Shown here in pieces: positions 21,468 through 51,196 of a stretch of DNA of 62,901 bases; positions within the stretch are counted from its first letter, which is position 1, and every line of letters starts with the position of its first letter. Position numbers and translations under genes: made by a program. The DNA comes from Octopus sinensis (taxonomy: Eukaryota). A model generated the notes under the pieces. It ran no database searches, was not told the origin of the DNA, and was given only the letters and a program-made list of their open reading frames with translations. Location: the NCBI RefSeq assembly GCF_006345805.1, contig NW_021833089.1:1-62901 (forward strand). Reading direction: 5' to 3'.

Positions 21468-21607
21468 AGCTTTGCGCAGAGGCGGTACCATGGCCAATGA
21501 GGTAAATCCGAGGCGTGGTTATTGCTAGTTGAAAACTATTCCCAATACCCCGCGTTGCTATCCATAATAGATAGCAAACGCAATTTTTACTCACCTCTGA
21601 GGAGGTG
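21468..21607 (+). ncRNA. U4: U4 spliceosomal snRNA, array variant, copy 1
   Basis: AGCTTTGCGCAGAGGC (U4/U6 stem II), GCCAATGAGG-TAAAT-CCGAGGC k-turn 5' stem-loop, TTGCTAGTTGAAAACT (stem I), CCCAATACCCCGC, 3' stem-loop, Sm-like AATTTTTAC, terminal CACCTC-TGAG-GAGGTG. Collinear with known metazoan U4. Confidence 0.96.
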
Positions 21608-21611
21608 CAAT

Positions 21612-21628
21612 ATCAATTAAAGAATAGA
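21612..21628 (+). terminator. Putative snRNA 3' box
   Basis: ATCAATTAAAGAATAGA 5 nt after the U4 end; copy 8 has ATCAATGTAATAATAGA (14/17 identical) at +6 in otherwise unrelated flank. Confidence 0.55.
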
Positions 21629-22449
21629 CATTAATATAGCCTTTTGGTTGGAAAACTTACTGCAGTGGTGGTCTCCTCAGAACTTAGAGTTCCGTTGATC
21701 ATTTAGTGTGTATCGTCGTCATTTTTTGGCAATGATGCATAGGAACGACAGCTACATCAAAATTTAATAACTCACTATTTCGGTAGCTAAAAGGCACTAA
21801 ATATTAAAATATAAAAGTTACAGGTATCAAAGAATAGCAACTGAGCAAAAAGTCACATAAAGGGGTGTAAATATCAATATATTTATTAACAACAATAGAG
21901 GAGCTAACGTAATTGAATTAAAATCAAATTAACATAATTGCTTTCACACAATTACTTTTGATGTTCAAACAGCAGTTTCTCATGATTTATAAACATCTAT
22001 GGGTCCAGTTTTCTTCAACAGTTTGCTAAGATGTTTATAATCATAACAATTTTCACTTCGGTAAAGTGCATGTGTGATGTTCAAACTTTCTATGCTCATC
22101 TGATTTCATAAAATTCATATTGTTGAATACTCTGGACATTTCAGGAAATTATGTGGGAAAAGGAAAAGCGAATTGGTATTAAACAGTCGAATGCGATGAT
22201 ACTACAATCCAGAAATAAACTGTTTTCTTTTTTTTTTTTTGTTTTTTTAGCTAAACATTAAAAATTGCAATTTAAAAATATAATATAATCAGAATGTTGA
22301 AAATTTATATATAAAAAATAACTGCAAGAATATTGTTATACTCTACTGCTTTATAATATCAAAATGACTGTGATAGTCATATTTTACAACTTTTATTGTT
22401 ACACTTGTTTATTCATTCAATGTCGATTTTGTTTTTTAATGAAGCAGCA

Positions 22450-22646
22450 GGGGATTTCGGCCTTTCCAACGTGGGTTGTCGAGGTGTTAAGACGTGTGAA
22501 GACGTTGCTAAGGTTGGGTGAAGCAGCTGCTATCTTTAGCGTTCGGGTCGGGGCTGTGACGAAGGATCCGTTACCACTGAAGGGTCTCTATCGGAGCGAA
22601 GAGAAGGTAGGTGCCTTTATATATCAACTATCTCGCACACACCACA
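22450..22646 (+). mobile_element. Solo LTR (5'-truncated) of the Gypsy element at 39052-43124
   Basis: 197 nt essentially identical to 39052-39248. Left junction equals that of the 5' LTR; right junction (CACCACA|GAACAAAC) equals that of the 3' LTR. Confidence 0.93.
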
Positions 22647-23601
22647 GAACAAACATAAAAGTTTGCATGGATTGCGGGTTTTGCGCTTGTTATAATGAAG
22701 GGATTAAAAGTATTTCAAAAACGTTTATAAGAATAAATTATTTTTATATTTAGTGTAATTTGTCCTACGAATATTTCAAATCTATAATGATTTTTATTGT
22801 CTCTAATATTCTGATGATGATTGAAATTCCTGGAGAAATGTGGAAATTTGTACAACAGCAAATTCTGAGTGCGTAGTTGAAATGACATGCGACCTAAATT
22901 TAGGTAAGAAAATTCCGAATTCAATTCTGATTTCACTTTGGTGGAAAAGTACTCAATGTAACATTACATTTAATACTAAAAAAAAGAAAGAGAAGGCATT
23001 GAAATCACGTGAGTGCGCATGTGTGTGTGTGTGTCCGTCCGTGTATATACGCGCATGTGGACGTATGTGCATAGGTCCGGTCGTGCATGCGTATGTATGA
23101 GTGTTTGTACCGATGAGTTTTGTCCTGGACCGGGAATTAAATTCTAGATTAGCTGCCGATGGCTTTGTGCGGGAATAAACAAAACTTACGTGGGTGATTG
23201 TGTGTGTGCGTGCATGCATGCATGCGTGTGTATGTTTGTTTGTCAGTGTATGAGTTTTATCGAGGACCGAGACACAAATTCTGGATGAGCTGTCGATAGC
23301 TTTGTGCAGGCAAAACAAAAAATAAACGTCAGTCTAACGGCCTTGACATCATCAAACAAAGGTCACTTCTGTATGAAGTCATATACCAAACATATGAAAA
23401 CAGTAATATGATATAAAAACTATATATTTGGCATTCTTGTATTAGTTAAACAATTAAATATATACAACCGATGCATAGCCACTAAAGAAATCTATTGCTA
23501 CTATTCACGGGAATTAATGAATAACAATAAAGTGAAAAGCAATATCAGTGATTGTATAGGGTTGATTTTCTGTTAAGTTGACAAATGGCGTCAGTTTCGG
23601 T

Positions 23602-23741
23602 AGCTTTGCGCAGAGGCGGTACCATGGCCAATGAGGTAAATCCGAGGCGTGGTTATTGCTAGTTGAAAACTATTCCCAATACCCCGCGTTGCTATCCATA
23701 ATAGATAGCAAACGCAATTTTTACTCACCTCTGAGGAGGTG
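23602..23741 (+). ncRNA. U4: U4 snRNA, array variant, copy 2
   Basis: Identical to copy 1. Confidence 0.96.
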
Positions 23742-25033
23742 CAATATCAATTGAAAAATAGACATTAATATAGCCTTTTGGTTGGAAAACTTACTGCAGT
23801 GGTGGTCTCCTCAGGACTTACAGTCCCGTTGATCATTTAGTGCATATCATCGTCATTTTTTGGCAATGATGCATAGGAACGACAGCTAGTTCAAAATTTA
23901 TTAACTCACTATTTCGGTAGCTAAAAGGCACTAAATATTAAAATATAAAAGTTAGGTATCAAAGAATAGCCACTGAGCAAAAAACCACATATAGGGGTGT
24001 AAATATCAATATATTTATTGAAAACAAAAGAGGAACTAACGTAATTAAATTAAAATCAAATTAACATAATTGCTTTCACACAATTTCTTTTGGTGTAACA
24101 TCAATGGATCCAATTTTCTTCAACAGTTTGCTAAGATGTTTATAATCATAACAACAATTTTCACTTCACTTCGGTAAAGTGCATGTTAGATGGTGCAATA
24201 TCAATTAAAGAATAGACATTAATATAGCCTTTTAGTCGGAAAACCTATTGCAATCGTTCTCTGTTTAAATGATTCCCTTAACTTAGAGTCCCATTGACCA
24301 TTTAGTGCGTATCGTCGTCATTTTTTGGCATGATGCATAGGAACGACTGCCAATACAAAATTTTATAACTTACTATTTCGATAGCTAAATATTAAAACAT
24401 AACAGTGATAGGTATCAAAGAATAGCAGCTAAGCAAAAAATACATAAAGGGGTATACATATCAAAATATCTGTTTAAAATAAAAAAGGAACTATCGTAAT
24501 TAAATTGAAATCGAATTAACATAATTGCTTTCACACAATTTCTGTTCCTTTTCTTTTGATGTCCAAAGAGCAGTTTCTCGTGATTTATAAACATCTATGG
24601 GCCCTGTTTTTTTTTTTGTTTTTGTTTTTTTCAACAGTTTGCTAAGACGTTTATGATCATAACGACAATTGTCACTTCGGTAATGTGCATGTGAGATGTT
24701 CAAATTTTCTTAGTGTTCAAACTTTCTATGCTCATCTGATTTCTTAAAATTCATATAGTTGAATACTCTGTCCAAGTCAGCATATTATGTGGTAAAATGC
24801 AAAGTGCTAAAGCTAATTTACACTATGTCCGAATTAACATTACATAGTTGAATGCGTTGATACTCCAATCCAGAAATAAACTGTTCTTCGGACATTTGAA
24901 TTTTCTTTTATAGCTAAACACTAAAAATTGCAATTTAAAAATGAATCAGTATGTTGAAACGGTATATATAAAAATTAACAGCAAGAATATTATTTACAAT
25001 TGATGGATATTTGTCCTCATCTTGTTTGTTGTT

Positions 25034-25079
25034 AACACAACGTTTCGGCTGATATACCCTCAAGCATTAATCTGGTGTC
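25034..25079 (-). ncRNA. Minimal hammerhead ribozyme motif in pLTR (core mutated CAGATTA)
   Basis: GACAC-CAGATTA-..AGCC-GAAAC-GTT-GTGTT; stem I GACAC/GTGTT; palindromic AACGTT stem III. Confidence 0.6.
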
Positions 25080-25274
25080 TTGGGGAAATTTCGAACCTGG
25101 GTTCTCATTCCTAAGGTATTTTTCGATGTTGTTATTATTATTAAGGTCACTGCCTGGAATCGAACTTGGAGTTAGTAGCCAGCGCTCTTAACCTACGCCA
25201 TATGCCAGTGGGCAATTATGGAGTGAATTTTTAGGACTCATAAGTCTAATATTCTCCTATCCTTCCTTGATACC

Positions 25275-25502
25275 TATTTCTTTATTACCCACAGGGGCTA
25301 AACATAGAGGGGACAAACAAGGACAGACATAGGTATTAAGTCGATTATATCGACCCCAGAGCGTAACTGGTACTTAATTTATCGACCCCGAAAGGATGAA
25401 AGGCAAAGTTGACCTCGGCGGAATTTGAACTCACAACGTAACGACAGACGAAATACCGCTAAGCATTTCATCCGGCGTGCTAACGTTTCTGCCAGCTCGC
25501 CG
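25275..25502 (-). mobile_element. tRNA-derived SINE inserted only in Penelope copy 1
   Basis: Flanked by CCTTCCTTGATACC duplication (25261-25274, 25503-25516); the site is empty in copies 2 and 3. Head AAGGCGGCGAGCTGGCAGAAACGTTAGCACG. Confidence 0.88.
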
Positions 25503-27451
25503 CCTTCCTTGATACCGGTTCCCATATGCTGTTCATATCTGCACTTGGTCTGCTTAGGAGGTTGTTGTGTCCTAGCACATGTGCTGCTTCTTTTAGTTCT
25601 CGTATTTTCCAGTGGTGTTCACTGTCTATTATTTTAACTTTATCCCACAGGGGGAGGTGGTCTCCATTTTTTCATACATGATCAGCTATACCCGATTTAT
25701 CAATATCTCCTCGTGTCACAGCTTTGCGATGTTTCTCTATCATTATTTTGAAAGGGCGGCATGTTTCGCCTTTGTATAACCTACGACAACTGCATGCGAT
25801 GGAGTACACGCAGTTCTTAGTCATATTCTCTTCTGTTGGTGGTTTTACTCGAAAGAGATATTTGCGAAGTGTTATATTACTTTTGAATACTGTCCTGATG
25901 TCATATGGGCTACATATCTTTTGTATCTTTTCGGAGGGGCCTTCCACATAGGGTAGACAGACTGTGGACAGTTTATTGGTTTTATCCTCTCTTTTATTCA
26001 TAATTGGAGTGGAGAGAATGCTTTTGGGTAGTTGTTGCTCAATAGAGTGTTACTGAGCTTAATCAATTCTTTGTGGTGGGTATCACGATCGCTACTTATA
26101 TTCATTGCTCGATGTTTTAGGCACTGAGCAATCCATATCTTTACACTGTATGGATGACGGGAGTTGAAGTTGAGACATCGTCCAGTGAAGGTCGGCTTGC
26201 GGTATACGGATGTCCTGATAATTACTTGGTGCGTATAATTAATACGTCCAGGAATGCTAGCTGATTGTCTTTTTTCTTTTTCCATTGTGAACTGTATGGA
26301 TGGCTTTATTGAGTTCACATGATCTAACAGCACTGGGATATCTTCCTGGTGAGGCCAGAGTATGAAGGTGTCATCAACATATCGCAACCATAGGGTTGGT
26401 TTTAGTGTTGTAGATCCTAAAGTCAAATTCTCAAAGTATTCCATTATATATTGGCTATTATCGGTGATAATAGCGAACCAATAGCTAAACCCTCTTCTTG
26501 TTGATATATAGCAGTGTCCATATTTAAGTAGGTAGTTTCTACACAGAAGGTTGTAGTGACGCTATACAGCGGCGCGCGCGCGCACCGTCCATTCCTGTTT
26601 CGCGCGTGCGGGGTTGGTGCTTTCACCACGGAAGTAGGACCCTTTTGCCTACGTGGCAGTTAGCCGAGGCAAGGGGATCGTAGAGCGTTTGACCACTAGC
26701 AGCAGTCAGCAGCGACTTGAGACATGGCTATCGAAGGTACAACACGTATATTCTCTCTGTCCAATTTTGATAGCAGTCGGCCGAAGGCTTTAACCAAATT
26801 GTTGCAGACTACATCATCTTCCTTTCTCCGGACGCCATCTTTGACAAGTGTCGTTTTGCATTTGAACACTTTCTTATTTTACAGCGATAAGGTTCAGCTG
26901 AGACACATCTATACCAAAGGGATGCCAGATACACCAATTATCTGTTACCACATAAGAGAATAAAGTAGATATATATTATTTACGTCTGCGTCTTGTTGTT
27001 TCTGACTGGTAGAGAATCTGGATTATTAAAGCAACGGAAAGTGATTGCTTCTCGCACCCCCAAAAGGTCCAGAGAAGATATTCACACGAGTTCGTTACAA
27101 GGTTAACATTTCCATCAAGTTTCTTATTGGTATACTAGTGCGTTCTTTTAGATGGATGACTATCACTAGTTTTTCTTGAATCACCGATAGTGCTTCACCA
27201 GTTGGGACTTTAGTGAACAGACTTATCACATCTAGACTCACCATCTGGTTGTATTCATCCACTGAGCCGCTTCCTTGTGGATATAATCAGTCCATTAGCA
27301 GAACAGTCAACATCGTACGTGAAGAATTCCACCCACTTCACAGAATTGAATCAAGCCAAGTGGTGAGTCTAGATGTGATATCAACAACACCAACAACAAC
27401 AACATCGAAAAATACCTTAAGAATGAGAACTCATGTTCGAAATTTCCCCAA

Positions 27452-27497
27452 GACACCTGATGAAGATTGGGGGGTATGTCAGCCGAAAAGTTTTGTT
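27452..27497 (+). ncRNA. Minimal hammerhead ribozyme motif in inverted pLTR (CTGATGA core intact, stem III mutated)
   Basis: GACAC-CTGATGA-agattggggggtatgtcagcc-GAAAA-GTT-TTGTT; equivalent motifs occur in copies 2 and 3. Confidence 0.65.
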
Positions 27498-28492
27498 AAC
27501 AACAAAAAAGATGAAGACAAATATCCGTCAACTGTAAATAACGTAAATAATGTACATAATTCCTCATCTCTTATATATAGAACAGCAAGAATATTGTTAT
27601 ACTCTGCTACTTTACTATATCAAATTGACTGCAATAGTCATATTTTACAACTTTTACTGTTCCATATAAATTTTTTTTTGTTTTTTGTTTTTGAAATCGT
27701 AATCGAATGGGCCAAAGGCATAAGTAATTCTCCGCGAGAACAAACAAAAGTTTGCATAGATAACGGGGTTTTATCTTCATTATATATAATGAAAGAATTA
27801 AAAGTATTTCAAAAACGTTTCTAAAAATGAATTATTTTTATATTCAATGTCATTTGTCCTCTGAATATTTCAAATCTATAATGATTTTCAATTGTTTTTA
27901 ATATTCTGAAGATGCCTAAAATTTCCGTAGAAAGGTGGAAATTTGCGCCATGGCAAATTCCGTGTGCGCAGTGGAAGTGCCATGCGGCCTAAATTTAGGT
28001 AGGAATAATTCTGAATTAAATTCTGATTTCACTTCCGTAGAAAAGTACTCAATATAACACTAAACTTAATAATTAGAAAAGCAGAGAAAGCATTGGAATT
28101 ACCTTTGTGTGTGCGTGTATATGTGTGTTTGTCAGTGTATGAGTTTTGTCGAGAACCCAGATACAAATTCTGGATGAGCAACCGATGGCTTTGTGCAGGT
28201 ATAAACAGAAAAATAAACGTCAGTCTAATGGCCTTGACATCATCAAACAAAGGTCACTTCTGTATGAAGTCATATACCAAACATATAAAAACATAAATAT
28301 GATATAAAAACTAAATATTTGGCATTCTTGTATTAGTTAAACAATTAAATATATACAACCGATGCATAGCCACTAAAGAAATCTATTGCTACTATTCACG
28401 GGAATTAATGAATAACAATAAAGTGAAAAGCAATATCAGTGATTGTATAGGGTTGATTTTCTGTTAAGTTGAAAAATGGCGTCAGTTTCGGT

Positions 28493-28632
28493 AGCTTTGC
28501 GCAGAGGCGGTACCATGGCCAATGAGGTAAATCCGAGGCGTGGTTATTGCTAGTTGAAAACTATTCCCAATACCCCGCGTTGCTATCCATAATAGATAGC
28601 AAGCGCAATTTTTACTCACCTCTGAGGAGGTG
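28493..28632 (+). ncRNA. U4: U4 snRNA, array variant, copy 3
   Basis: As copy 1 except GATAGCAAGCGC (A>G in the 3' stem-loop, shared with copy 6). Confidence 0.96.
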
Positions 28633-29879
28633 CAATATCAATTGAAAAATAGACATTAATATAGCCTTTTGGTTGGAAAACTTACAGTCCCGTTGATCAT
28701 TTAGTGCATATCGTCGTCATTTTTTGGCAATGATGCATAGGAACGACAGCTAGTTCAAAATTAATAACTCACTATTTCGGTAGCTAAAAGGCACTAAATA
28801 TTAAAATATAAAAGTGAGGTATCAAAGAATGGCAACTGAGCAAAAACAACATAAAGGGGTGTAAATATCAATATATTTATTGAAAACAAAAGAGGAACTA
28901 ACGTAATTACATTAAAATCAATTAACATAATTGCTTTCACACAATTTCTTTTGGTGTCTAAACAGCAGTTTCTCATGATTTATAAACACCAATGGATCCA
29001 ATTTTCTTTAACAGTTTGCTAAGATGTTTATAATCATAACAACAATTTTCACTTCACTTCGGTAAAGTGCATGTTAGATGGTGCAATATCAATTAAAGAA
29101 TAGACATTAATATAGCCTTTTAGTCGGAAAACCTATTGCAATCGTTCTCTGTTTAAATGATTCCCTTAACTTAGAGTCCCATTGACCATTTAGTGCGTAT
29201 CGTCGTCATTTTTTTGGCATGATGCATAGGAACGACTGCCAATACAAATTTTATAACTTACTATTTCGATAGCTAAATATTAAAACATAACAGTGATAGG
29301 TATCAAAGAATAGCAGCTAAGCAAAAAATACATAAAGGGGTATACATATCAAAATATCTGTTTAAAAAAAAAAGGAACTATCGTAATTAAATTGAAATCG
29401 AATTAACATAATTGCTTTCACACAATTTCTGTTCCTTTTCTTTTGATGTCCAAAGAGCAGTTTCTCGTGATTTATAAACATCTATGGGCCCTGTTTTTTT
29501 TTTGTTTTTTGTTTTTTTCAACAGTTTGCTAAGACGTTTATGATCATAACGACAATTGTCACTTCGGTAATGTGCATGTGAGATGTTCAAATTTTCTTAG
29601 TGTTCAAACTTTCTATGCTCATCTGATTTCTTAAAATTCATATAGTTGAATACTCTGTCCAAGTCAGCATATTATGTGGTAAAATGCAAAGTGCTAAAGC
29701 TAATTTACACTAATGTCCGAATTAACATTACATAGTTGAATGCGATGATACTCCAATCCAGAAATAAACTGTTCTTCGGACATTTGAATTTTCTTTTATA
29801 GCTAAACACTAAAAATTGCAATTTAAAAATGAATCAGTATGTTGAAACGGTATATATAAAAATTAACAGCAAGAATATT

Positions 29880-33135: not shown

Positions 33136-33275
33136 AGCTTTGCGCAGAGGCGGTACCATGGCCAATGAGGTAAATCCGAGGCGTGGTTATTGCTAGTTGA
33201 AAACTATTCCCAATACCCCGCGTTGCTATCTATAATAGATAGCAAACGCAATTTTTACTCACCTCTGAGGAGGTG
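33136..33275 (+). ncRNA. U4: U4 snRNA, array variant, copy 4
   Basis: As copy 1 except CTATCTATAATAGATAG (C>T, extends the 3' stem by one pair). Confidence 0.96.
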
Positions 33276-37767: not shown

Positions 37768-37907
37768 AGCTTTGCGCAGAGGCGGTACCATGGCCAATGA
37801 GGTAAATCCGAGGCGTGGTTATTGCTAGTTGAAAACTATTCCCAATACCCCGCGTTGCTATCCATAATAGATAGCAAACGCAATTTTTACTCACCTCTGA
37901 GGAGGTG
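37768..37907 (+). ncRNA. U4: U4 snRNA, array variant, copy 5
   Basis: Identical to copy 1. Confidence 0.96.
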
Positions 37908-40029: not shown

Positions 40030-42831
40030 AGGCGTTATTGGAGACGCTGCCATTAATTGACGTGGAAGCCGAGGGGAAGACGTTCAAGGCCCTCGTGGAT
40101 ACGGGCTGTACGACCACCCTTGTGACTTCAAGGGTGACGAAGGAATGGAACGGGGCTAGTAGCGTCCGGGCGGTCGACGGCAGCGAAATCCGTTGCAGAG
40201 GCAGCAGCAAGGTAGAGATAGTGGTGCGCGGCGCGACGCTAAGGCTGCAGGTAATTGTGGCTGAACACGTGATAGATGGTGTTGATGTGGTGATGGGGAT
40301 GGACGCCATCAACTGCCTTGGTGGCGTCGGTGTTGTGGGAAATGAGGTCACGTTCGGAAGCGTGGGGGCGTCGTGCACTGCGAGCCAGGATCGCCAGAGA
40401 GAGCAGAGCCCCGCGAGGGACTGCGCCGCTTACACCATCGAGGAAAAAGACTTTCAGGCGGTGTTCGATGGTCAGCGGTGGACGATAGAGTGGCAATGGA
40501 AGGACGAGCACCCGACGCTGGAAAACAGGGTGAGCTGTTACCAACATACCCTTAAAGGCCACGCCAGGGTTGCGTTTGAAGACGGGGTGGAGAGGTGGAT
40601 CGAGAAAGGGGTCCTTCTCCCTTGGAAGGAGGAGGTAACGGGCGGATTGCTACCCCTGATGGCGGTGGTGCAGCCTACGAAGGGAAAAGTCAGACCGGTG
40701 TTGGACTTCAGGGAGCTAAACCAGCATATATCGTGTCACAAGGGAGGTGAGGCGACAGACGTATGTGGCGAGACGTTACGTGCGTGGAGACAGTCGACCG
40801 AGGCAGCGACGATTGTCGACTTGAAATCGGCATACTTGCAGCTCCATGTGAGCGACAAACTGTGGCGATATCAGCTGGTGCGGTACAAAGGCCGGACGTA
40901 CTGTTTAACCAGGCTGGGTTTCGGGCTGAATTCCGCTCTGAAGATCATGGCGGCAGTGCTTAAGTCCGTCCTAGGGAAAGACGGCAAGATTAGAAAGGCC
41001 ACCAGCTCCTACATTGACGACATTTTGGTGGACGAAACTGTAGTGCCAGCCAACGAGGTAGTTAGACATCTGGCGAAGTTTGGACTGATTGCGAAGCCAC
41101 CGGAGTCGATGGAAGGGGGATCCGCGCTGGGGCTGAAGCTGCGGAGAGATAGATCGGGTGAATTGGTGTTCCGGAGAGTGAATGAAATCCCAGAGCTGAG
41201 TTCCAGCGTCAGCAGGAGAGAGCTGTTCTCGGTGTGTGGGAAGTTGGTCGGTCACTACCCGATCGCCGGATGGCTGCGCACGGCGTGTAGTTACACGAAG
41301 AGACGAGCAGAGGGGGAGAGTTGGGGCGACAAGGTGGGGGAAGGGACGGTGGCGATGATGCAGGAAATCCTAGAGAGGACGAGAGCGGAAGACCCGGTCA
41401 GGGGGAACTGGTACGTTCCCAAGACGGAATGCGGGACCGTCTGGTGTGCTGCTAGCAGTATAGCGATAGGGGTTGTGTTGGCAATCGAAGGTGCTGCGGT
41501 GGAGGACGCGGCCTGGCTTCGGAAAGCAGATGATTTCAAACACATCAATGTCGCCGAATTAGACGCGGTGCTGAAAGGGGTGAACTTGGCCCTGAAATGG
41601 GGGCTGCGCACAATTGAGATCGGACGGATTCGGCCACTGTGCTTGGCTGGGTAGGATCGGTGATCACCGGTGAAAGGAGAGTGCGGACGAAAGGTGCCGC
41701 GGAGATGTTAGTGAAGCGCCGTCTAGGAGTTCTAGGTGAATTGATCGCCGAGTTCGGACTGAAGCTGAATGTGGTTTTCGTGCCTTCGGAAAAAAACAGG
41801 GCAGACGCACTGACCAGGGTGAAAAGAGCGTGGTTGGAAGAACCGGAGGAGGCCCGGAAAGGGATAGCTGCGGCGTGTCGGTTGGATGACTGCGAACTGA
41901 AGAGACTGCACGCTATGCATCACCTGGGTGTGGACAGGACTCTGTATCTGGTGAAGAAAATTGATGCTGACGTCACTAGGAGAAGCATCCGGAAGGTGGT
42001 TGGGAGCTGCGACAGGTGTCAGTCCATCGACCCTGCTCCGTGTGGGCATGAACAGGGAAGCCTTTCGGAGGAGCAGAACTGGAAAAGGCTAGCTGTGGTT
42101 GTGACACTCTACCGTCAGGGAATTACCTCTCCATGGTCGACTGCGGGTCAGGCTGGCTGGCCATTTGGAGGGAGTTAAGAACGGGCATTGCTGACGAGAT
42201 CGCGCAGATCCTGAACGGGATATTTTTAGAGAGAGAACTACTGATGGACACCGGGGCGGCGTTTCGTTCGGAAGCATTGAGGGTTATGCTTGATCGGTGG
42301 AATGTGCGTCGCTTGTTCAGAGCAGCGTATAGGCCGAGCGGTAACGGGATCGTGGAGAGGCACCATTGGACAGTCAAGGCCATAGCAGAAAGAGGGCACA
42401 TTTCGCCGCTTGAAGCAGTTTTTTGGTACAACTTGTCTCCCCGATCCGGGTAAGCTGAGGAATCTGCGCCGCAGAGAGCTGTGTTCAAATATGAATGGAG
42501 GCACCCGAGCAAAGCGCCGGAGGGTCACGAGGAAGAGAAGGGACCCGTTCGCGTGAAAATAGGGGAGGAAGTCTGGGTTAAGCCACCAAAGGCACACTGT
42601 ACGTCTCAATGGAGCAGAGGAACGGTGACGGCGGTCAATTCCAGAAACAACGTATCCGTGGATGGAATGCCGCGACACGTCTTGGACCTTCGCAGGATTG
42701 TCGCTTCGACCGACGACGATTCTGGAGAGGGGGAGAACGAGGTGCCCAGCTTGAGAAGATCTCGACGCGCAAGGCGCCCTCCCGGTTGGATGGTGGACTA
42801 CGACATGGAGCGGAGAGATTGTGATCTTTAA
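39975..42831 (+). pseudogene. Gypsy pol (protease, RT, RNase H, integrase) with frameshifts and a stop
   Basis: ALVDTGC (PR); KVRPVLDFRELN, VDLKSAYLQ, RLGFGLN, YIDDIL (RT); WCAASSIAIG, HINVAELDA (RH); HAMHHLGVDRT..CDRC, MDTGAAF, GNGIVER (IN). Lesions near 41630, 42120 and 42450. Confidence 0.9.
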
Positions 42832-43945
42832 GATGAGGGTGGCGTGTGGGATGACGTCAGCAGCTGGGTGCGTTGACCGGAAGCTGGGGCAACCGGAAGG
42901 GGCTGCAGTGAGGCGTGCGCAGGCTGCGGGGATTTCGGCCTTTCCAACGTGGGTCGTCGAGGTGTTAAGACGTGTGAAGACGTTGCTAAGGTTGGGTGAA
43001 GCAGCTGCTATCTTTAGCGTTCGGGTCGGGGCTGTGACGAAGGATCCGTTACCACTGAAGGGTCTCTATCGGAGCGAAGAGAAGGTAGGTGCCTTTACAT
43101 ATCAACTATCTCGCACACACCACAGAACAAACATAAAAGTTTGCATGGATTGCGGGTTTTGCGCTTGTATATAATGAAGGGATTAAAAGTATTTCAAAAA
43201 CGTTTATAAGAATAAATGATTTTTATATTTAGTGTAATTTGTCCTACGAATATTTCAAATCTATAATGATTTTTATTGTCTCTAATATTCTGATGATGAT
43301 TGAAATTCCTGGAGAAATGTGGAAATTTGTACAACAGCAAATTCTGAGTGCGTAGTTGAAATGACATGCGACCTAAATTTAGGTAAGAAAATTCCGAATT
43401 CAATTCTGATTTCACTTCAGTGGAAAAGTACTCAATGTAACATTACATTTAATACTAAAAAAAAGAAAGAGAAGGCATTGAAATCACGTGGGTGTGCATG
43501 TGTGTGTGTGTGTGTGTGTCCGTGTATATACGCGCATGTGGACGTATGTGCATAGGTCCGGTCGTGCATGCGTATGTATGAGTGTTTGTACCGATGAGTT
43601 TTGTCCTGGGCCGGGAATTAAATTCTGGATGAGCTGTCGATAGCTTTGTGCAGGCACAAACAAAGAATAAACGTCAGTCTAACGGCCTTGACATCATCAA
43701 ACAAAGGTCACTTCTGTATAAAGTCATATACCAAACATATGAAAACAGAAATATGATATAAAAATACATATTCGGCATTCTTGAATTAGTTAAACAATTA
43801 AATATATACAACCGATGCACAGCCACCAAAGAAATCTATTGCTACTATTCACGGGAATTAATGAATAACAATAAAGTGAAAAGCAATATCAGTGATTGTA
43901 TAGGGTTGATTTTCTGTTAAGTTAAAAAATGGCGTCAGTTTCGGT

Positions 43946-44085
43946 AGCTTTGCGCAGAGGCGGTACCATGGCCAATGAGGTAAATCCGAGGCGTGGTTAT
44001 TGCTAGTTGAAAACTATTCCCAATACCCCGCGTTGCTATCCATAATAGATAGCAAGCGCAATTTTTACTCACCTCTGAGGAGGTG
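43946..44085 (+). ncRNA. U4: U4 snRNA, array variant, copy 6
   Basis: As copy 3. Confidence 0.96.
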
Positions 44086-45335
44086 CAATATCAATTGAAA
44101 AATAGACATTAATATAGCCTTTTGGTTGGAAAACTTACTGCAGTGGTGGTTTCCTCAGAACTTACAGTCCCGTTCATCATTTAGTGCATATCGTCGTCAT
44201 TTTTTGGCAATGATGCATAGGAACGACAGCTAGTTCAAAATTTAATAACTCACTATTTCGGTAGCTAAAAGGCACTAAATATTAAAATATAAAAGTGAGG
44301 TATCAAAGAATAGCAACTGAGCAAAAAACAACATAAAGGGGTGTAAATATCAATATATTTATTGAAAACAAAAGAGGAACTAACGTAATTACATTAAAAT
44401 CAAATTAACATAATTGCTTTCCCACAATTTCTTTTGGTGTCTAAACAGCAGTTTCTCATGTTTTATAAACATCAATGGATCCAATTTTCTTCAACAGTTT
44501 GCTAAGATGTTTATAATCATAACAACAATTTTCACTTCACTGCGGTGAAGTGCATGTTAGATGGTGCAATATCAATTAAAGAATAGACATTAATATAGCC
44601 TTTTAGTCGGAAAACCTATTGCAATCGTTCTCTGTTTAAATGATTCCCTTAACTTAGAGTCCCATTGACCATTTAGTGCGTATCGTCGTCATTTTTTGGC
44701 ATGATGCATAGGAACGACTGCCAATACAAAATTTTATAACTTACTATTTCGATAGCTAAATATTAAAACATAACAGTGATAGGTGTCAAAGAATAGCAGC
44801 TAAGCAAAAAATACATAAAGGGGTATACATATCAAAATATTTGTTTAAAATAAAAAAGGAACTATTGTAATTAAATTGAAATCGAATTAACATAATTGCT
44901 TTCACACAATTTCTGTTCCTTTTCTTTTGATGTCCAAAGAGCAGTTTCTCGTGATTTATAAACATCTATGGGCCCTGTTTTTTTTTTGTTTTTTTTTTTT
45001 CAACAGTTTGCTAAGACGTTTATGATCATAACGACAATTGTCACTTCGGTAATGTGCATGTGAGATGTTCAAATTTTCTTAGTGTTCAAACTTTCTATGC
45101 TCATCTGATTTCTTAAAATTCATATAGTTGAATACTCTGTCCAAGTCAGCATATTATGTGGTAAAATGCAAAGTGCTAAAGCTAATTTACACTAATGTCC
45201 GAATTAACATTACATAGTTGAATGCGATGATACTCCAATCCAGAAATAAACTGTTCTTCGGACATTTGAATTTTCTTTTATAGCTAAACACTAAAAATTG
45301 CAATTTAAAAATGAATCAGTATGTTGAAACGGTAT

Positions 45336-45558
45336 ACTCTTTTTACTCTTTTACTTGTTTCAGTCATTTGACTGCGGCCATGCTGGAGCACCGCCTTTAG
45401 TCGAGCAAATTGACCCCGGGACTTATTCTTTGTAAGCCCAGTACTTATTCTATCGGTCTCTTTTGCCGAACCGCTAGGTGACGGGGACGTAAACACACCA
45501 GCATTGTCAAGCAATGCTAGGGGGACAAACACAGACACACATACATATATATATATAT
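45336..45558. mobile_element. SINE (Octopus-type) inserted into the spacer TATATA site
   Basis: CTTGTTTCAGTCATTTGACTGCGGCCATGCTGGAGCACCGCC...TTTGCCGAACCGCTAG core; related copies at 48655-48850 (inverted) and 61740-61930. Confidence 0.85.
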
Positions 45559-45939
45559 TCATCGAGCAATGAATATAAGTAGCGATCGTGATACCCACCA
45601 CGAAGAATTGATTAAGCTCAGTAACACTCTATTGAGCAACAACTACCCCAAAAGCATATCGTCGTCATTTTTTGGCAATGATGCATAGGAACGACAGCTA
45701 GTTCAAAATTTAAGAAAGAGAAGGCATCGAAATCACGTGGGTGCGCATGTGTGTGTGTGTCCGTGTATATACGCGTATGTGGACGTATGTGCATAGGTTC
45801 GGTCGTGCATGCGTATGTATGAGTGTTTGTGCCTATGAGTTTTGTCCTGGGCCGGGAATTAAATTCTGGATTAGCTGCCGATGGCTTTGTGCGGGAATAA
45901 ACAGAAATTACGTGGGAGATTGAGTGTGTGTGTGCGTGT

Positions 45940-47598
45940 TAGCTCAAGTTTTGTTCAGGTCGCACGTGTTTTGAGGAGCTGGAGTATTTCTATCGTAAGT
46001 TGCCATATTTGTTATTTGAATAATTGTTGATACGGTTTCGCGTCACACGGCGTCTGTTCTGGCGGCCGTTGTCTGTCTGAGGTGAGACAGACAAAGGATT
46101 ATGAACCGCCTCTCCCTCGGGAAGAATTTATTTGAAAGTTTGTCGGAATTATCGTCATCTGAGGAGGAGGAGTTGGAAAGAGCAGTGGAAGAAATGGATA
46201 GAAGGCTGGAAAAGACGTATGCAGGAGTGATGAGGCCGAAAGAAAAAGAGGTGGACCTGGCTAAATTACCAGGCTTCCAGGATTTTATGAAAGAGGAGGA
46301 GAACGGCGAAGTCGAGCTGTCACCTCCAGCAAAGCGTGGCGAGTGGTTCAACCGTAGAACCATCAAATATAGAGTGTACGTGAATGGAGGAAGAAGGATT
46401 GAAATAGTAAATATGGAAGCTATTGAAGAGGCATTGAAACAGACTGGAGAGGAAATTGTTTACCTGACAAGAGGAATGGAGTATGGAACTGTAACGGTTC
46501 AATATAGAAGTGAGAACGTCGCCAGAAAAATAGCAACCAAGGTGGTAAAAACGGAGAAGATATACTTACTGCCCTCGTATCTAAATAGAAGAACCACAAG
46601 AATTAGGGTGGAGGGAATACCCCCACACCTAGAGGGTGAATACATAACGGCAGCGGTGATTAAGGGAAACGAGGAAAAGGTGGACATCCTCCACGCCACT
46701 ATGAAATACGAAGGCGTGAGAGGTGCCACCTTGGACATGAATGTACAGACAGAAGCGGAAACAATAGAAAGGTTGACAGAAAATATAAGAACAGGGAACA
46801 TTATTATGAGAGTGTGGGTGGAGAGCAGAGCCCCACGATGTTATAAGTGTGGCCAGAGAGGCCACATAAGAGCCAACTGCCCACCCCCACCAAAGGAAAA
46901 GGAAACGGAACCCCCAAAAAAGGAAGACACTAAGGAAAGGGAGAACCAAACAGAAAGGGAAGCAACTGAAGAAGAGGAGAACCAGCAAGAGTGGGAAGAA
47001 GGGAGAAAAAAAAGAAAAAGAAAGAAAAAAGCAAACAGTATGAAACCCCAACCCACCCCAACACCACCCGCACCCTCTGAGTCCCATCCTTCCTCTGCAA
47101 ACAGTGATTCCACCCACTCCCCGCCTACAAGAAAAACAAAAACAAATGCAGACACACAGAACGAACGAAGTCCCAGGCACTATTTTTTATGTGTTGTGAG
47201 GAAGAAGGACACCCAGAACTCAAAGAGAATAATACATAAAGATTTATGGCATGAACGTGAAGACGGGAGTTGCGCGGTGTTGAAAGATGAAATTATGGAC
47301 ACAATGGTGATGTTGTGTGAGGAAAAGGGTATAAAAGTGATGAAAGTGACAATGCAGGATGAAGAGATAGAGAAGTATGAAAGGAAAACGAAGAGTGTGA
47401 TGGGAAAGGAAGGAATTGTGATTGGAAATGGGTGATGAAGGACAGGTAAGTGGTGCTGGCGGATGGGGCCGTTCAGCACCGCTTTCATTTTATCATTTTC
47501 ATTTTAAAATTAATTTCTCATAATTTTAGATTGTTCTATGTCCTCAATGTGTTGTGATGTATTTCTCTGTGTCGCCCCTAGTGGGTAATAAAGAAATA
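45940..47598 (+). mobile_element. ORF1-only non-LTR (Tx1/L1-like) element, 1.66 kb, in a (GT)n target
   Basis: 16-bp duplication GTGTGTGTGTGCGTGT (45924-45939, 47605-47620), 161-nt leader, single ORF, ~160-nt trailer with AATAAA, no ORF2. Confidence 0.8.
46101..47435 (+). CDS. LINE ORF1/Gag-like nucleic-acid-binding protein (RRM-like regions + CCHC knuckle)
   Basis: Uninterrupted 444-aa ORF; TRIRVEGIPPHL RRM-like strand, PRCYKCGQRGHIRANCP knuckle, charged and Pro/Ser-rich linker, basic KKRKRKKK NLS-like motif. Confidence 0.85.
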   Translation: MNRLSLGKNLFESLSELSSSEEEELERAVEEMDRRLEKTYAGVMRPKEKEVDLAKLPGFQDFMKEEENGEVELSPPAKRGEWFNRRTIKYRVYVNGGRRIEIVNMEAIEEALKQTGEEIVYLTRGMEYGTVTVQYRSENVARKIATKVVKTEKIYLLPSYLNRRTTRIRVEGIPPHLEGEYITAAVIKGNEEKVDILHATMKYEGVRGATLDMNVQTEAETIERLTENIRTGNIIMRVWVESRAPRCYKCGQRGHIRANCPPPPKEKETEPPKKEDTKERENQTEREATEEEENQQEWEEGRKKRKRKKKANSMKPQPTPTPPAPSESHPSSANSDSTHSPPTRKTKTNADTQNERSPRHYFLCVVRKKDTQNSKRIIHKDLWHEREDGSCAVLKDEIMDTMVMLCEEKGIKVMKVTMQDEEIEKYERKTKSVMGKEGIVIGNG

Positions 47599-48016
47599 GT
47601 GTGTGTGTGTGTGTGCGTGTGTACGTACATGCATGCATGCGTGTGTATGTCTGTTTGTCAGTGTATGAGTTTTGTCGAGGACCGGGGCACAAATTCTGGA
47701 TGAGCTGCCGATAGCTTTGTGCAGGCACAAACAAAAATAAACGTCAGTCTAATGGCCTTGATATCATCAAACAAAGGTCACTTCTGTATGAAGTCATATA
47801 CCAAACATATGAAAACAGAAATATGATATAAAAGCTACATATTTGGCATTCTTGTATTAGTTAAACAATTAAGTATATACAACCGATGCACAGCCACTAA
47901 AGAAATCTATTGCTACTATTCACGGGAATTAATGAATAACAATAAAGTGAAAAGCAATATCAGTGATTGTATAGGGTTGATTTTCTGTTAAGTTGAAAAA
48001 TGGCGTCAGTTTCGGT

Positions 48017-48156
48017 AGCTTTGCGCAGAGGCGGTACCATGGCCAATGAGGTAAATCCGAGGCGTGGTTATTGCTAGTTGAAAACTATTCCCAATACCCC
48101 GCGTTGCTATCCATAATAGATAGCAAACGCAATTTTTACTCACCTCTGAGGAGGTG
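48017..48156 (+). ncRNA. U4: U4 snRNA, array variant, copy 7
   Basis: Identical to copy 1. Confidence 0.96.
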
Positions 48157-48654
48157 CAATATCAATTAAAGAATAGACATTAATATAGCCTTTTGGTGAT
48201 CGTGTGTGGGCGCTTATACGTGCTTGTGTGTGAGTTTTGACGAGGACTGGGTATTAAATTCTGAATGAGCTGCCGATAGCTTTGTGCAGACATAAACAGA
48301 AGAAATATGCGTCAGTCTAATGGCCTTGATATCATCAAACAACTCATAACCACGTAAGAGCACTTTTCTAACGGCTGACAAGGGAGACACTCTCCCTCCC
48401 TACCTTGTGTGTGTGTGTTTGCAGGGCTGGGATGGACGGTTTGATAGGATCGGGCAAGTCCGATCTCTTTCGCGGGACCGGGGCGTAAACAAACTAGCAC
48501 CGGCAGTCAAACGGCAGCTACACATTCAGATAGACACATACTCACACTAATATATAAATCAAAAGACGCTTGCACAATATGCCGCGCAGTGGGGTTAAAT
48601 CTGAGACCACGTTTGAGATGCAGGCTTCTTAACAAAACAGCTACAAACAACATA

Positions 48655-49136: not shown

Positions 49137-49227
<91 letters not shown>

Positions 49228-49372
49228 CAGACAGACTGACAGAGAAGGGGTAACCCCCTTCCTATTCAGCATTCATTCATTTATTTATTTATTTAGTCCT
49301 TTACCATTGTATTGGAATGGGTTTAAGGATGGCGACCATATAAATCTCTGTGTGTGTATGTATATATGTATG

Positions 49373-49466
<94 letters not shown>

Positions 49467-49467
49467 T

Positions 49468-49505
<38 letters not shown>
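49137..49505. repeat. (AGAT)n and (TA)n/(TATG)n microsatellites
   Basis: Directly visible. Confidence 0.95.
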
Positions 49506-49511
<6 letters not shown>

Positions 49512-51055
49512 GATGTATTAAACTGATGCTTAATAAAACTACTTTCAAGTATTTACAAATTCGTTTCGCTTTGGGATACCCATGTTTAATTTTATACAAT
49601 CTCGGCGTCACACTTTCTTTTCGTTTTCCGTTACTTCTACGTCCCTGGAACGAAAGGCAACCTATTTCATTATTTAACTGTTTTAAAAATTGACTTATCA
49701 TTAATAGTATTAAATAATATTTTCATTTTCCGAAACATTTTCTTCACATGAATATGTTCTCTAATAGTAATGAATTATTTAGTAAAGCGAGTCCCACCTT
49801 TTTACATTTCTGGTTTTTACGTTCCAATTGTAATAATTCAGAACATAGTCAAATTCTCCCGCATGTCACACCCTGTTATTTAAAAGGTGCATTGGATAAT
49901 GTAGTCGTGTATTTGGATCATGAGGTTGCTGGATCAGAACCGACCTGGAGCTAAAAACAATTACAAGTGGTAAACTTATGTGTGTTAATGTTTATGTACT
50001 CTTGCTGTTCAACATGCTAGAAATAACAGCTTCATTTATCTTCAATACATATATTTTCGTCGTTAAGGTTAGTCCTATTTGGCTTAAAAAAAAAAAAAAA
50101 GATGGAAAGGTCACTGTTGACTCTTACAAAAGACTAGATGGTTACATTTGAATCCCTAATCATGGTTGAAACACTTAATAAATGACGAGCATTTGGTAAA
50201 AGACATGTCGGATCTTTTCAGTTTGAACGGCAGTTTTTTAAAATAATTTCCACGTAACTAAACACTTTTAAACTTCGTATACTGGTTGAATGTGTTTATA
50301 AAACATCTTTTTCTCTTGGCTTTATTGAGAAGATTCAATGGTTTGTAAGATATTTGTTGTTGTTTTTTCTTCAATTTCAACCAATCAATGACGTCTATTG
50401 AGGTAAAAAAATTCTGTGCCCTATGAATATGTCCTTCGTTTAAGAAACAGGTTGGGTTTATTTACATTTGTGAAGAAAAAAAGATACCCTTACCCCCACC
50501 CCTAACACTAAAACATTGAAATGCAATAGATCGATAGTAGGGTCATAATTGTGGGTGACAATTGTTTTTCAGTCGCTAAAGTAAAGTATACCCAAAATTA
50601 GATGACTGGTCTTATTGTCCAGAGAGCCAGCAGTGAATGATGGAATTGATAAAGCTTCGAACACTATACCTTACGCCGTATTCAAATCCCGATGAAGGTT
50701 AAAAAGCATTTCTCCTGCGGATAGGCGAATTAATCAGTATTGCAATAATCTGCAAGTCGAAATAAAAATACGGGAGTGTGTTACCAGTTAATGAAATGTA
50801 TTTATCTGTATTGTACTGATCCACTGGATTGTAATAAATAATGATATTCCATTTTTAACAATCGAGAGGCCCTCAGTGTGGTTAATCGATGTGCTAGATA
50901 TAACAGCGAATACTGCATAATCTACCATGCGTAAATTAGCAGGGACACTAGTAAACAAATTCAAAAGCAACGAACAACTTAGTTATAGGTTTACCTGGGT
51001 TATCATCTCTGCAACTTACAAATAAAATTACAATCTATTATTACATTGATTTCTA

Positions 51056-51196
51056 CACCTCCGTAGAGGTGCGCAAAAATTGCGCACAGCACCCTCGTGG
51101 GATGCCATACGCGGGGTATTGGGAATAGTTTTCAACTAGCAATAACCACGCCTCGGATTTACCTCATTGGCCATGGTACCGCCTCTGCGCAAAGCT
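51056..51196 (-). ncRNA. U4: U4 snRNA, second (canonical-looking) isoform, 141 nt
   Basis: First ~87 nt identical to the array copies; then GCGTATGGCATCC-CACGA-GGGTGCTGTGCGC stem-loop, canonical Sm site AATTTTTG, terminal CACCTC-TACG-GAGGTG. Confidence 0.96.

What the first reader, a model, noticed from the sequence alone, without database searches (positions are those of the whole stretch)
21468..51196. Two structurally distinct U4 snRNA isoforms: a 7-copy amplified variant with a rewritten 3' domain beside one canonical gene
All eight genes share an identical 5' ~87 nt (U6-pairing stems I/II, k-turn). The seven array copies have a 3' stem-loop (GCGUUGCUAUC/GAUAGCAA-CGC) unalignable with that of copy 8 (GCGUAUGGCAUCC/GGGUGCUGUGCGC), yet both fold fully. 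The array copies also change the Sm site from AAUUUUUG to AAUUUUUA and the terminal c(UACG)g tetraloop to c(UGAG)g. Structure kept without sequence similarity suggests a functional variant rather than decay (inference). Stage- or tissue-specific snRNA variants are known in Drosophila, Xenopus and sea urchins. I am not aware of an amplified U4 variant with a non-canonical Sm site in a cephalopod. It could supply, for example, a maternal or embryonic U4/U6 snRNP pool.
Basis: partly seen in the sequence, partly recalled or inferred. Interest (0 to 1): 0.85.

Follow-up and report, generated by a model that had tools for sequence, protein, structure and literature searches.

The report
Octopus U4 snRNA gene array with paralogs
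The window holds a real tandem array of seven intact U4 spliceosomal RNA genes plus one diverged neighbour, but this is the ordinary way animals keep snRNA genes (a main cluster plus a few variant copies) rather than a new kind of spliceosomal RNA.

Summary
Rfam U4 (RF00015) matches eight genes at the stated coordinates. Nucleotides 1-88 are identical in all eight. The 3' stem-loop, the base after the Sm U-run (A in the array, G in copy 8) and the terminal loop (UGAG vs UACG) differ as described.

- **Both forms look functional.** All eight genes carry the promoter shared by this genome's U1, U2 and U5 genes (AATTAA at -90, CAGTG at -56) and a 3' box. The stem differences are compensatory. Within the array, promoter and gene are far better conserved than the spacers.
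- **The labels "variant array" and "canonical single copy" do not hold.** The array copies score higher against RF00015 than copy 8. They have the best promoter match and make up 6-7 of the genome's 8-9 octopus-type U4 genes. A third full-length isoform lies on another chromosome.
- **The "non-canonical Sm site" is overstated.** The ring-bound heptad AAUUUUU is intact and only the eighth base changes. The same change is borderline in human U4 saturation editing. Three related U4 genes from metagenomes also lack G there.

U1, U2, U5 and U6 are clustered in this genome too. Stage-specific use is untested. Verdict: a new member of a known kind, of low to moderate interest.

The parts
20699..48197 (+). 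Tandem U4 snRNA gene array: seven head-to-tail units. Spacings between genes are 2134, 4891, 4643, 4632, 6178 and 4071 bp.
   Evidence: Self-BLAST shows units 88-99.7% identical; units 3 and 4 are 99.66% identical. The C4 haplotype has one unit fewer.
21378..21629 (+). Array copy 1 transcription unit: promoter 21378-21416, gene 21468-21605, 3' box 21619-21629.
   Evidence: RF00015 119.6 bits; promoter pattern; 3' box.
23512..23763 (+). Array copy 2 transcription unit: promoter 23512-23550, gene 23602-23739, 3' box 23753-23763.
   Evidence: RF00015 119.6 bits.
28403..28654 (+). Array copy 3 transcription unit: promoter 28403-28441, gene 28493-28630 (A>G at the bulged base of the 3' stem-loop), 3' box 28644-28654.
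   Evidence: RF00015 118.5 bits.
33046..33297 (+). Array copy 4 transcription unit: promoter 33046-33084, gene 33136-33273 (C96U extends the 3' stem to 13 bp), 3' box 33287-33297. This unit is absent from the C4 haplotype.
   Evidence: RF00015 123 bits.
37678..37929 (+). Array copy 5 transcription unit: promoter 37678-37716, gene 37768-37905, 3' box 37919-37929.
   Evidence: RF00015 119.6 bits.
43856..44107 (+). Array copy 6 transcription unit: promoter 43856-43894, gene 43946-44083 (A>G at the bulge), 3' box 44097-44107.
   Evidence: RF00015 118.5 bits.
47927..48178 (+). Array copy 7 transcription unit: promoter 47927-47965, gene 48017-48154, 3' box 48168-48178. Unit homology ends about 20 bp after the 3' box.
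   Evidence: RF00015 119.6 bits.
51033..51287 (-). Solitary inverted paralog (copy 8, isoform B): promoter 51249-51287 (AATTAAT ... GCCAGTG), gene 51196-51058, 3' box AATAATAGAT at 51042-51033. Its flanks are unrelated to the array units.
   Evidence: RF00015 114.8 bits. Its 3' half occurs only here and at the allelic C4 site.

Best explanation
The array at about 20.7-48.2 kb is this octopus-like genome's principal U4 snRNA gene cluster.

It consists of seven independent RNA polymerase II snRNA-type transcription units (six on the other haplotype). Each has a distal AATTAA element at -90, a proximal ATCAGTG element at -56 and a 3' box 14 nt past the RNA. The units are kept nearly identical by unequal crossing-over or gene conversion together with purifying selection.

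Copy 8 is an old solitary paralog. It lies in inverted orientation with unrelated flanks. It therefore escapes homogenisation with the array but is still under selection.

The 5' 88 nt hold the two U6-pairing stems, the k-turn stem-loop and the central single-stranded region. This part is strongly constrained and stayed identical. The 3' stem-loop only needs to remain a helix, so it drifted through compensatory substitutions. A third solitary paralog on scaffold C15 shows the same pattern.

All three RNAs should pair with U6 in the same way. All three should assemble an Sm core on an unchanged AAUUUUU heptad followed by a 6-bp terminal hairpin.

Shown here: gene identity, copy structure, promoter and 3'-box conservation, compensatory pairing and the conservation gradient. 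Inferred: transcription, Sm binding, and that the array supplies most of the U4.
For: **All eight are U4 genes.**
- Eight RF00015 hits at 2.5-2.7 times the gathering score.
- U4 nt 2-16 and 54-61 pair with this genome's own U6 at -24.3 and -8.4 kcal/mol.

**All eight carry this genome's snRNA gene signals.**
- AATTAA-N27-30-CAGTG occurs 8 times in the window, exactly upstream of the 8 genes, against 0.29 expected.
- The same two elements sit at -89..-91 and -55..-57 in U1, U5 and U2 genes of this genome.
- The array's GCAATATCAGTGA and GAAAAATAGAC are identical to the U1 PSE and 3' box. Copy 8 (GCCAGTG) and the C15 gene (ACCAGCA) match less well.

**The array is under selection.** Variable sites among the seven copies:

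| Region | Variable sites |
|---|---|
| -350 to -121 | 17% |
| Promoter (-120 to -1) | 5.8% |
| nt 1-88 | 0% |
| nt 89-140 | 2 sites |
| Beyond +181 | 82% |

- Gene versus far-upstream flank: Fisher p = 5.7e-7.
- The two variable gene sites fall at a bulge and at a loop-closing position.

**The stem differences are compensatory.**
- A vs B: 6 two-sided and 2 one-sided changes in 11 pairs. A vs C: 5 two-sided. B vs C: 6 two-sided and 3 one-sided. All positions stay paired.
- All isoforms fold into the two canonical 3' hairpins.

**Census and genomic context.**
- The array-type 3' half occurs in 13 copies (7 in the window, 6 on C4). The copy-8 type occurs in 2.
- U1, U2, U5 and U6 also lie in clusters or arrays in this genome.

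**Literature.**
- The Sm heptad is AAUUUUU and the G125 pocket is not G-specific (PMC4756616).
- The 3' stem-loop is not among the regions depleted in human RNU4-2 saturation editing (PMC13253345).
- In that assay n.125G>A scores -0.317 (borderline), n.126A>C +0.015, n.135A>G +0.035 and n.136C>A -0.177.
Against: - No expression, cap or Sm-binding data could be obtained.
- The array promoters lack the TATA-like element near -30 seen in U1, U5, copy 8 and the C15 gene. U2 genes also have only a weak one.
- The array's 3' stem-loop is the weakest (-12.5 kcal/mol against -19.5 and -19.6). By comparison with the metagenomic relatives and the Rfam consensus it is also the most derived.
- Human n.125G>A is formally just below the depletion threshold, so A at that position may not be fully neutral.
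- 5'-truncated U4 pseudogenes with the C15-type 5' loop (6) outnumber those with the array/copy-8 type (3). This could mean the single C15 gene is, or was, strongly expressed in the germ line.
- No other cephalopod genome could be searched.
Confidence: 0.7

Rival explanations
1. The amplified array encodes a specialised U4 isoform, for example for a maternal or embryonic U4/U6 snRNP pool. Copy 8 and/or the C15 gene is the constitutive somatic U4.
For: - Developmental switching of U4 isoforms is documented in Drosophila, Xenopus and chicken (PMC4291461).
- The array differs from copy 8, the C15 gene, U1 and U5 in lacking a -30 TATA-like element. That difference could underlie different regulation.
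- The array has the most derived 3' domain.
- C15-type 5' pseudogenes are more numerous than array/copy-8-type ones.
Against: - Seven copies is a small amplification.
- U1, U2, U5 and U6 of this genome are clustered too, so clustering is the default state here and not a mark of specialisation.
- The array has the best consensus PSE and 3' box and the highest Rfam scores.
- There are no expression data either way.
Confidence: 0.2
2. The array copies are non-functional. On this view they are pseudogenes carried along in a segmental tandem duplication.
For: - A at the eighth Sm-site position departs from the Rfam consensus.
- The 3' stem is weaker than in the other isoforms.
- Retrotransposon fragments lie in the spacers.
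Against: - Promoter, gene and 3' box are selectively conserved against 17-82% variable flanks.
- No copy carries a disabling change.
- The only two polymorphisms are structure-neutral or stabilising.
- The bipartite promoter is intact at the exact spacing in all seven copies.
- If the array were dead, only two U4 genes would serve a 2.7-Gb genome in which the other snRNAs are multi-copy.
Confidence: 0.03
3. Copy 8 is the inactive or decaying member: an orphon left at the array edge. If so, there is effectively one working isoform at this locus.
For: - It has the lowest RF00015 score (114.8 bits).
- Its PSE is weaker (GCCAGTG).
- Five of its 13 stem pairs are G-U.
- Sequences flanking its Sm heptad are self-complementary and are predicted to pair with the 5' end in the free RNA.
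Against: - nt 1-88 show no change at all.
- The 13-bp stem is fully maintained by compensatory change.
- AATTAAT at -91, a TATA-like element and a 3' box are retained at the correct spacing although the flanks are otherwise unalignable.
- The gene is identical on both haplotypes.
Confidence: 0.15

Closest known systems
U4 snRNA isoforms in Drosophila (U4:38AB, U4:39B, U4:25F) and in vertebrates (two U4 groups; Xenopus and chicken U4 switching), as summarised in PMC4291461
   Same: - Several U4 genes in one genome that differ in sequence while keeping the fold.
[quoted passage not shown]
   Different: - Here the difference in the 3' stem-loop is much larger: most pairs are replaced, whereas vertebrate U4 paralogs differ at only three nucleotide positions.
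- Drosophila paralogs also differ within nt 1-47.
- One isoform here is in a tandem array.
- Expression is unknown here, whereas it was measured in those species.
Tandemly repeated snRNA gene arrays under concerted evolution, such as the human RNU2 array (cited in PMC4291461). Sea urchin and Xenopus U1/U2 gene repeats are a further example, from my own knowledge.
   Same: - Head-to-tail units, each with one complete transcription unit.
- Near-identity of the genes within the array.
- A copy-number difference between haplotypes.
   Different: - Only 6-7 copies.
- Units are irregular in length and interrupted by retrotransposon fragments.
- It is U4 rather than U1 or U2.
Human variant snRNA genes (variant U1, U2, U4 and U5; PMC8457000 and PMC7328512, listed)
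   Same: Multigene families in which sequence variants with intact promoters coexist with the major genes.
   Different: Many human variants are unstable or weakly expressed and carry scattered point changes. Here every isoform keeps full pairing through compensatory changes, and the multi-copy form is the one called 'variant'.

Membership tests
U4 spliceosomal snRNA (Rfam RF00015) | Covariance-model score at or above the gathering score (46 bits) over the full model | tested here: met
   All eight genes score 114.8-123 bits over model positions 1-138. The C15 isoform scores 121.3 bits.
U4 spliceosomal snRNA (Rfam RF00015) | Complementarity to U6 forming stems I and II | tested here: met
   RNAduplex with this genome's own U6 (L061): U4 nt 2-16 at -24.3 kcal/mol and U4 nt 54-61 at -8.4 kcal/mol. 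These regions are identical in isoforms A, B and C.
U4 spliceosomal snRNA (Rfam RF00015) | 5' stem-loop with k-turn (AAUGAGG ... CCGAGG) | tested here: met
   It aligns to the model's 5' stem-loop without non-canonical pairs. It is invariant in all eight genes.
U4 spliceosomal snRNA (Rfam RF00015) | Sm site followed by a 3'-terminal stem-loop (the 'snRNP code') | tested here: met
   The AAUUUUU heptad is present in all genes, followed 3 nt later by a 6-bp hairpin. The eighth base is A in the array and G in the consensus. Structural papers place that base outside the seven-protein register (PMC4756616).
U4 spliceosomal snRNA (Rfam RF00015) | Transcribed, TMG-capped and Sm-bound RNA | not testable with these tools
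   No RNA data were reachable. Look-ups of antisense ORFs in public assemblies found nothing.
Pol II snRNA-type gene of this genome | Distal AATTAA at about -90, proximal (A)TCAGTG at about -56, and an AAnAnnAGAY 3' box 9-16 nt past the RNA, as in the genome's U1, U2 and U5 genes | tested here: met
   All eight window genes and the C15 gene have them. The array lacks the -30 TATA-like element seen in U1 and U5.
Tandem snRNA gene array under concerted evolution | Head-to-tail units with one gene each; genes more alike within the array than to paralogs elsewhere; copy number variable | tested here: met
   Caveat: the copy-number difference rests on two assembled haplotypes.
Developmentally switched snRNA isoforms | Reciprocal stage- or tissue-specific abundance of the isoforms | not testable with these tools
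   Only literature precedent in other animals is available (PMC4291461).
snRNA retro-pseudogene | No promoter, truncated or mutated RNA body, dispersed location | tested here: not met
   The eight window genes are full length, with promoter and 3' box. True 5'-only pseudogenes exist elsewhere in the genome.

The most novel reading that the evidence does not exclude
The three octopus U4 isoforms are deployed differently. For example, the array isoform could supply a maternal, embryonic or neural pool. Its A at Sm-site position 8, its weaker 3' stem-loop and its promoter without a TATA-like element could give its snRNP different assembly or turnover kinetics. The result would be functionally distinct tri-snRNP populations in a cephalopod.
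Probability: 0.12. Interest if true: 0.5.

Novelty: new member of a known kind. Interest (0 to 1): 0.25.

Why it matters
This is a clean example of how an snRNA gene family evolves. The functional 5' half is frozen. The 3' helix is replaced pair by pair. A homogenised array sits beside paralogs that escaped homogenisation.

The work also yields the snRNA promoter grammar of this genome: AATTAA at -90, ATCAGTG at -56 and an AAnAnnAGAC 3' box. That grammar is useful for annotating cephalopod snRNA genes and for building expression cassettes.

If isoform-specific expression were later shown, it would extend developmental U4 switching to molluscs. As it stands, the finding does not challenge what is known about U4 or Sm-core assembly.

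Tried and rejected
- **Wider C4 region.** I used the 3.1-kb loci already held instead.
- **Other octopus data via ORF look-ups.** Exact-protein look-ups of ORFs overlapping the U4 genes found nothing.
- **Cross-species comparison.** No cephalopod genomes are reachable. The single metagenome scan gave four U4-bearing contigs of unknown eukaryotes. They are useful only as unnamed outgroups.
- **Literature.** No paper in the library combines 'U4 snRNA' and 'octopus'. A broader cephalopod search returned only genome papers.
- **Gene conversion of the 5' half between array and copy 8.** By inspection, all 4 informative 5' sites group A with B. Only 6 of 24 informative 3' sites do so. However, 3 of the 4 sites are one contiguous loop change, so the test is inconclusive. 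Plain purifying selection explains the identity equally well.
- **A-to-I editing turning the Sm-flank A into a G-like base.** Considered and set aside. The site is single-stranded and nothing here can test it.
- **The fourth U4 type (L015, L018, L019) as an octopus isoform.** Rejected as unlikely; see Noticed in passing.


Full report
**1. What is there**

Rfam's U4 model (RF00015, gathering score 46 bits) matches eight times in the window and nothing else reaches threshold. Seven matches are on the + strand, starting at 21468, 23602, 28493, 33136, 37768, 43946 and 48017 (118.5-123 bits). One is on the - strand at 51058-51196 (114.8 bits).

An alignment of the eight genes shows nt 1-88 invariant. 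After that, the seven + strand copies and the - strand copy differ in three places:
- the 3' stem-loop;
- the base after the Sm U-run (A in the array, G in copy 8);
- the terminal tetraloop (UGAG in the array, UACG in copy 8).

Two small polymorphisms exist inside the array. Copy 4 has C96U, which lengthens the stem. Copies 3 and 6 have A>G at the bulged base.

**2. Array structure**

Self-comparison shows a real tandem array from about 20.7 to 48.2 kb. Units are about 4.6 kb, with one of 2.1 kb and one of 6.2 kb, and are 88-99.7% identical.

The long unit and the last spacer contain retrotransposon-like ORFs: aspartyl protease, integrase zinc domain, DUF7047 and a gag zinc knuckle. Copy 8 shares nothing with the array outside the gene and short motifs.

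**3. Genome context**

The assembly has 2.72 Gb in 13,516 contigs. The window is collinear, in reverse orientation, with scaffold C4 at about 104.34-104.37 Mb at 97.6-99.97% identity. It is therefore an alternative haplotype or a duplicate assembly of that locus. C4 has six array copies and the same inverted copy. The window's extra unit is one of the 99.66%-identical pair, units 3 and 4.

Searching the genome with each isoform's 3' half finds the array type only in these 13 copies and the copy-8 type only in these 2.

- **A third isoform.** It lies at C15:56012735-56012870 and scores 121.3 bits. It has four changes in the 5' stem-loop and its own GC-rich 3' stem. Its Sm region is AAUUUUUAG and its terminal loop is UACG.
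- **A fourth, very different U4 type.** It sits on unplaced scaffolds and is probably foreign (see section 9).

U1 (C15, about 29 Mb), U2 (C3, about 19.7 Mb), U5 (C25, about 19.1-19.4 Mb) and U6 (C1, about 141.93-141.95 Mb, at least 20 copies) are all clustered or tandemly arrayed. A small tandem array is the normal state of snRNA genes in this genome.

**4. Are the genes live?**

Upstream regions of this genome's U1, U5 and U2 genes share a strict architecture. AATTAA lies at -89 to -91 and (A)TCAGTG at -55 to -57. Downstream there is an AAnAnnAGAY 3' box.

All eight window genes and the C15 gene have the same elements at the same spacing. In the window, AATTAA-N27-30-CAGTG occurs eight times, exactly in front of the eight genes, against 0.29 expected.

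The array's proximal element (GCAATATCAGTGA) and 3' box (GAAAAATAGAC) are identical to those of U1. Copy 8 (GCCAGTG) and the C15 gene (ACCAGCA) are weaker matches. One difference goes the other way. U1, U5, copy 8 and the C15 gene have a TATA-like element near -30 that the array lacks. U2 has only a weak one.

Among the seven array copies, the share of variable sites follows a clear gradient:

| Region | Variable sites |
|---|---|
| -350 to -121 | 17% |
| Promoter (-120 to -1) | 5.8% |
| nt 1-88 | 0% |
| nt 89-140 | 2 sites |
| 3'-box region | 5% |
| Beyond +181 | 82% |

For gene versus far-upstream flank, Fisher p = 5.7e-7. This is the signature of selection, or of homogenisation plus selection, on seven working transcription units. 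It is not the signature of decay.

**5. The 'rewritten' 3' domain**

All three isoforms fold into the canonical 3' stem-loop plus a 6-bp terminal hairpin, both as isolated domains and in the full RNA. Counting pairs from the base of the stem:

| Comparison | Pairs compared | Changed on both sides | Changed on one side |
|---|---|---|---|
| A vs B | 11 | 6 | 2 |
| A vs C | 11 | 5 | 0 |
| B vs C | 12 | 6 | 3 |

Every position remains a standard pair.

The array stem keeps the one-base bulge on the 3' strand that the Rfam consensus has, which is why it scores higher than copy 8. It is the most AU-rich and least stable of the three (-12.5 kcal/mol against -19.5 and -19.6). Compared with the metagenomic relatives it is also the most derived.

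[quoted passage not shown] The 3' stem-loop (n.85-117) is not among them (PMC13253345). Free compensatory drift in exactly this helix is therefore what one expects.

**6. The Sm site**

- The re-refined U4 core structure shows that the seven Sm proteins hold A118-U124, that is AAUUUUU. G125 lies between SmD1 and SmD2 in a pocket 'not specific for G'. U5 has U at that position. The heptad alone assembles at least as well (PMC4756616).
- Gemin5 also reads AAUUUUU rather than AUUUUUG (PMC5131779).
- The array keeps the heptad and the 3-nt spacing to the terminal hairpin.
- In the human saturation map, n.125G>A scores -0.317 against a depletion cut-off of -0.302, which is borderline. n.126A>C scores +0.015. 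The loop equivalents n.135A>G and n.136C>A score +0.035 and -0.177, which are not significant.
- Three related U4 genes recovered from metagenome contigs (organisms unknown) have U, C and A at the eighth position. The C15 isoform has A as well.

Calling this a non-canonical Sm site overstates a mild change at a flanking position.

**7. Most likely explanation**

The array is the main U4 gene cluster. Copy 8 and the C15 gene are solitary paralogs that escaped homogenisation. All three are probably functional.

U6 pairing is unaffected. Stems I and II form with this genome's own U6 and those regions are identical in the three isoforms. Which isoform is ancestral is mixed:
- Copy 8 keeps G at Sm position 8.
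- Copy 8 and the C15 gene keep the UACG loop.
- The array and the C15 gene keep the bulged stem and the UAAU-type loop.
- The C15 gene keeps the ancestral A25.

**8. What remains open**

Expression is the main gap. Precedent makes some stage or tissue bias plausible, given U4 switching in Drosophila, Xenopus and chicken (PMC4291461). The missing -30 element is a possible handle for differential regulation.

The 5'-only U4 pseudogenes give a weak and ambiguous hint. Six carry the C15-type 5' loop, three the array/copy-8 type and two another type. One of them mixes states. The C15-type loop is also closer to the outgroups, so these may simply be old.

**9. Comparison with known systems and verdict**

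This is a multigene snRNA family with a homogenised tandem array and diverged paralogs. That arrangement is known from human RNU2 and from fly and vertebrate U4 isoforms.

I found no prior description for a cephalopod, so it is a new member of a known kind. Interest is low to moderate.

The fourth U4 type (L015, L018, L019) is probably not octopus U4.
- It lacks the octopus promoter elements and has its own upstream motif.
- It left no pseudogenes on the chromosome-scale scaffolds among the loci examined.
- It lies on unplaced scaffolds; one of them (C9530) also carries a shorter U5 type that is otherwise found only on unplaced scaffolds.
- It sits next to an SmD3-like exon that is only 65% identical to the chromosomal copy.

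Noticed in passing
G000:C15:56012735-56012870 (- strand), locus L002:1501-1636: A third full-length U4 isoform (121.3 bits). It has a different 5' stem-loop (A25, GUUAU loop) and its own GC-rich 3' stem. Its Sm region is AAUUUUUAG and its terminal loop is UACG. It carries the same promoter and 3'-box architecture.
   Followed up: yes
window 1-62901 versus G000:C4:104339755-104367351 (L003-L006, L011, L012, L016): The window is collinear with a chromosome-scale scaffold at 97.6-99.97% identity in reverse orientation, so it is an alternative haplotype or a duplicate assembly. It has seven array units against six there.
   Followed up: partly
L015 (C12598), L018 (C9068), L019 (C9530), each U4 at 1501-1634; SmD3-like exon at L019:438-620 (-): A very different U4 type (begins AUCUUUGCGCAGUGGCAG; Sm region AAUUUCUG) on unplaced scaffolds. 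It has its own upstream motif (TTTAAMGCAGA). A shorter U5 type found only on unplaced scaffolds includes two copies on C9530. The adjacent SmD3-like exon is only 65% identical to the chromosomal copy on C6. This looks like DNA of a second eukaryote, or a very divergent paralogous set, in the assembly.
   Followed up: partly
L021-L029 (for example C24:23006511, C1:72708525, C21:20262645, C14:30492814): Dispersed copies of U4 nt 1 to about 68 joined directly to (ATT)n/(TAA)n microsatellites, followed by shared tails. L022 and L024 share one tail; L028 and L029 share another. They look like chimeric retrocopies or a U4-derived repeat family rather than simple pseudogenes.
   Followed up: partly
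U1: C15 about 28.98-29.18 Mb (L043-L054); U5: C25 about 19.09-19.41 Mb (L031-L042); U2: C3 about 19.70-19.73 Mb (L055-L060); U6: C1 about 141.93-141.95 Mb: All major spliceosomal snRNA genes are clustered. The Pol II-type genes share AATTAA at -90, ATCAGTG at -56 and an AAnAnnAGAY 3' box. Intact U6 genes (L061, L066) instead have ATGC(A/T)AATTAGAT near -65 and a TATA box near -30.
   Followed up: partly
window 39272-43065 and 46086-47435: Retrotransposon-like ORFs lie in two array spacers: aspartyl protease, integrase zinc-binding domain and DUF7047, and separately a gag-type zinc knuckle. They explain the GC-rich block and the 6.2-kb unit.
   Followed up: partly
window 16784-18052 (+): An uninterrupted 422-codon frame with a NOT2/NOT3/NOT5 C-terminal domain (E = 3.4e-25) lies just upstream of the array. 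It is either a large CNOT-family exon or a processed copy.
   Followed up: no
window 51058-51090 (- strand), 3' end of copy 8: In copy 8 the Sm heptad is flanked by perfectly complementary GUGCGC and GCGCAC. In the predicted fold of the free RNA, the region just after the heptad pairs with nt 7-14. This could occlude the Sm site before assembly. It is not seen in the array or C15 isoforms.
   Followed up: no
L069 (U6 1112-1217, U4 480-617) and L072 (U6 342-447, U4 1239-1377), metagenome contigs: In unknown eukaryotes, U6 and U4 genes lie linked within about 0.5-0.8 kb. These U4 genes have an upstream element (ATG[CT]AAATTAGGTG) resembling the octopus U6 promoter element, and Sm regions AAUUUUUUC and AAUUUUUCU.
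   Followed up: no
window 20822-20832 (- strand): An extra exact copy of the 11-mer AATATCAGTGA lies at the array's left edge with no snRNA gene behind it. It is probably chance or a remnant.
   Followed up: no
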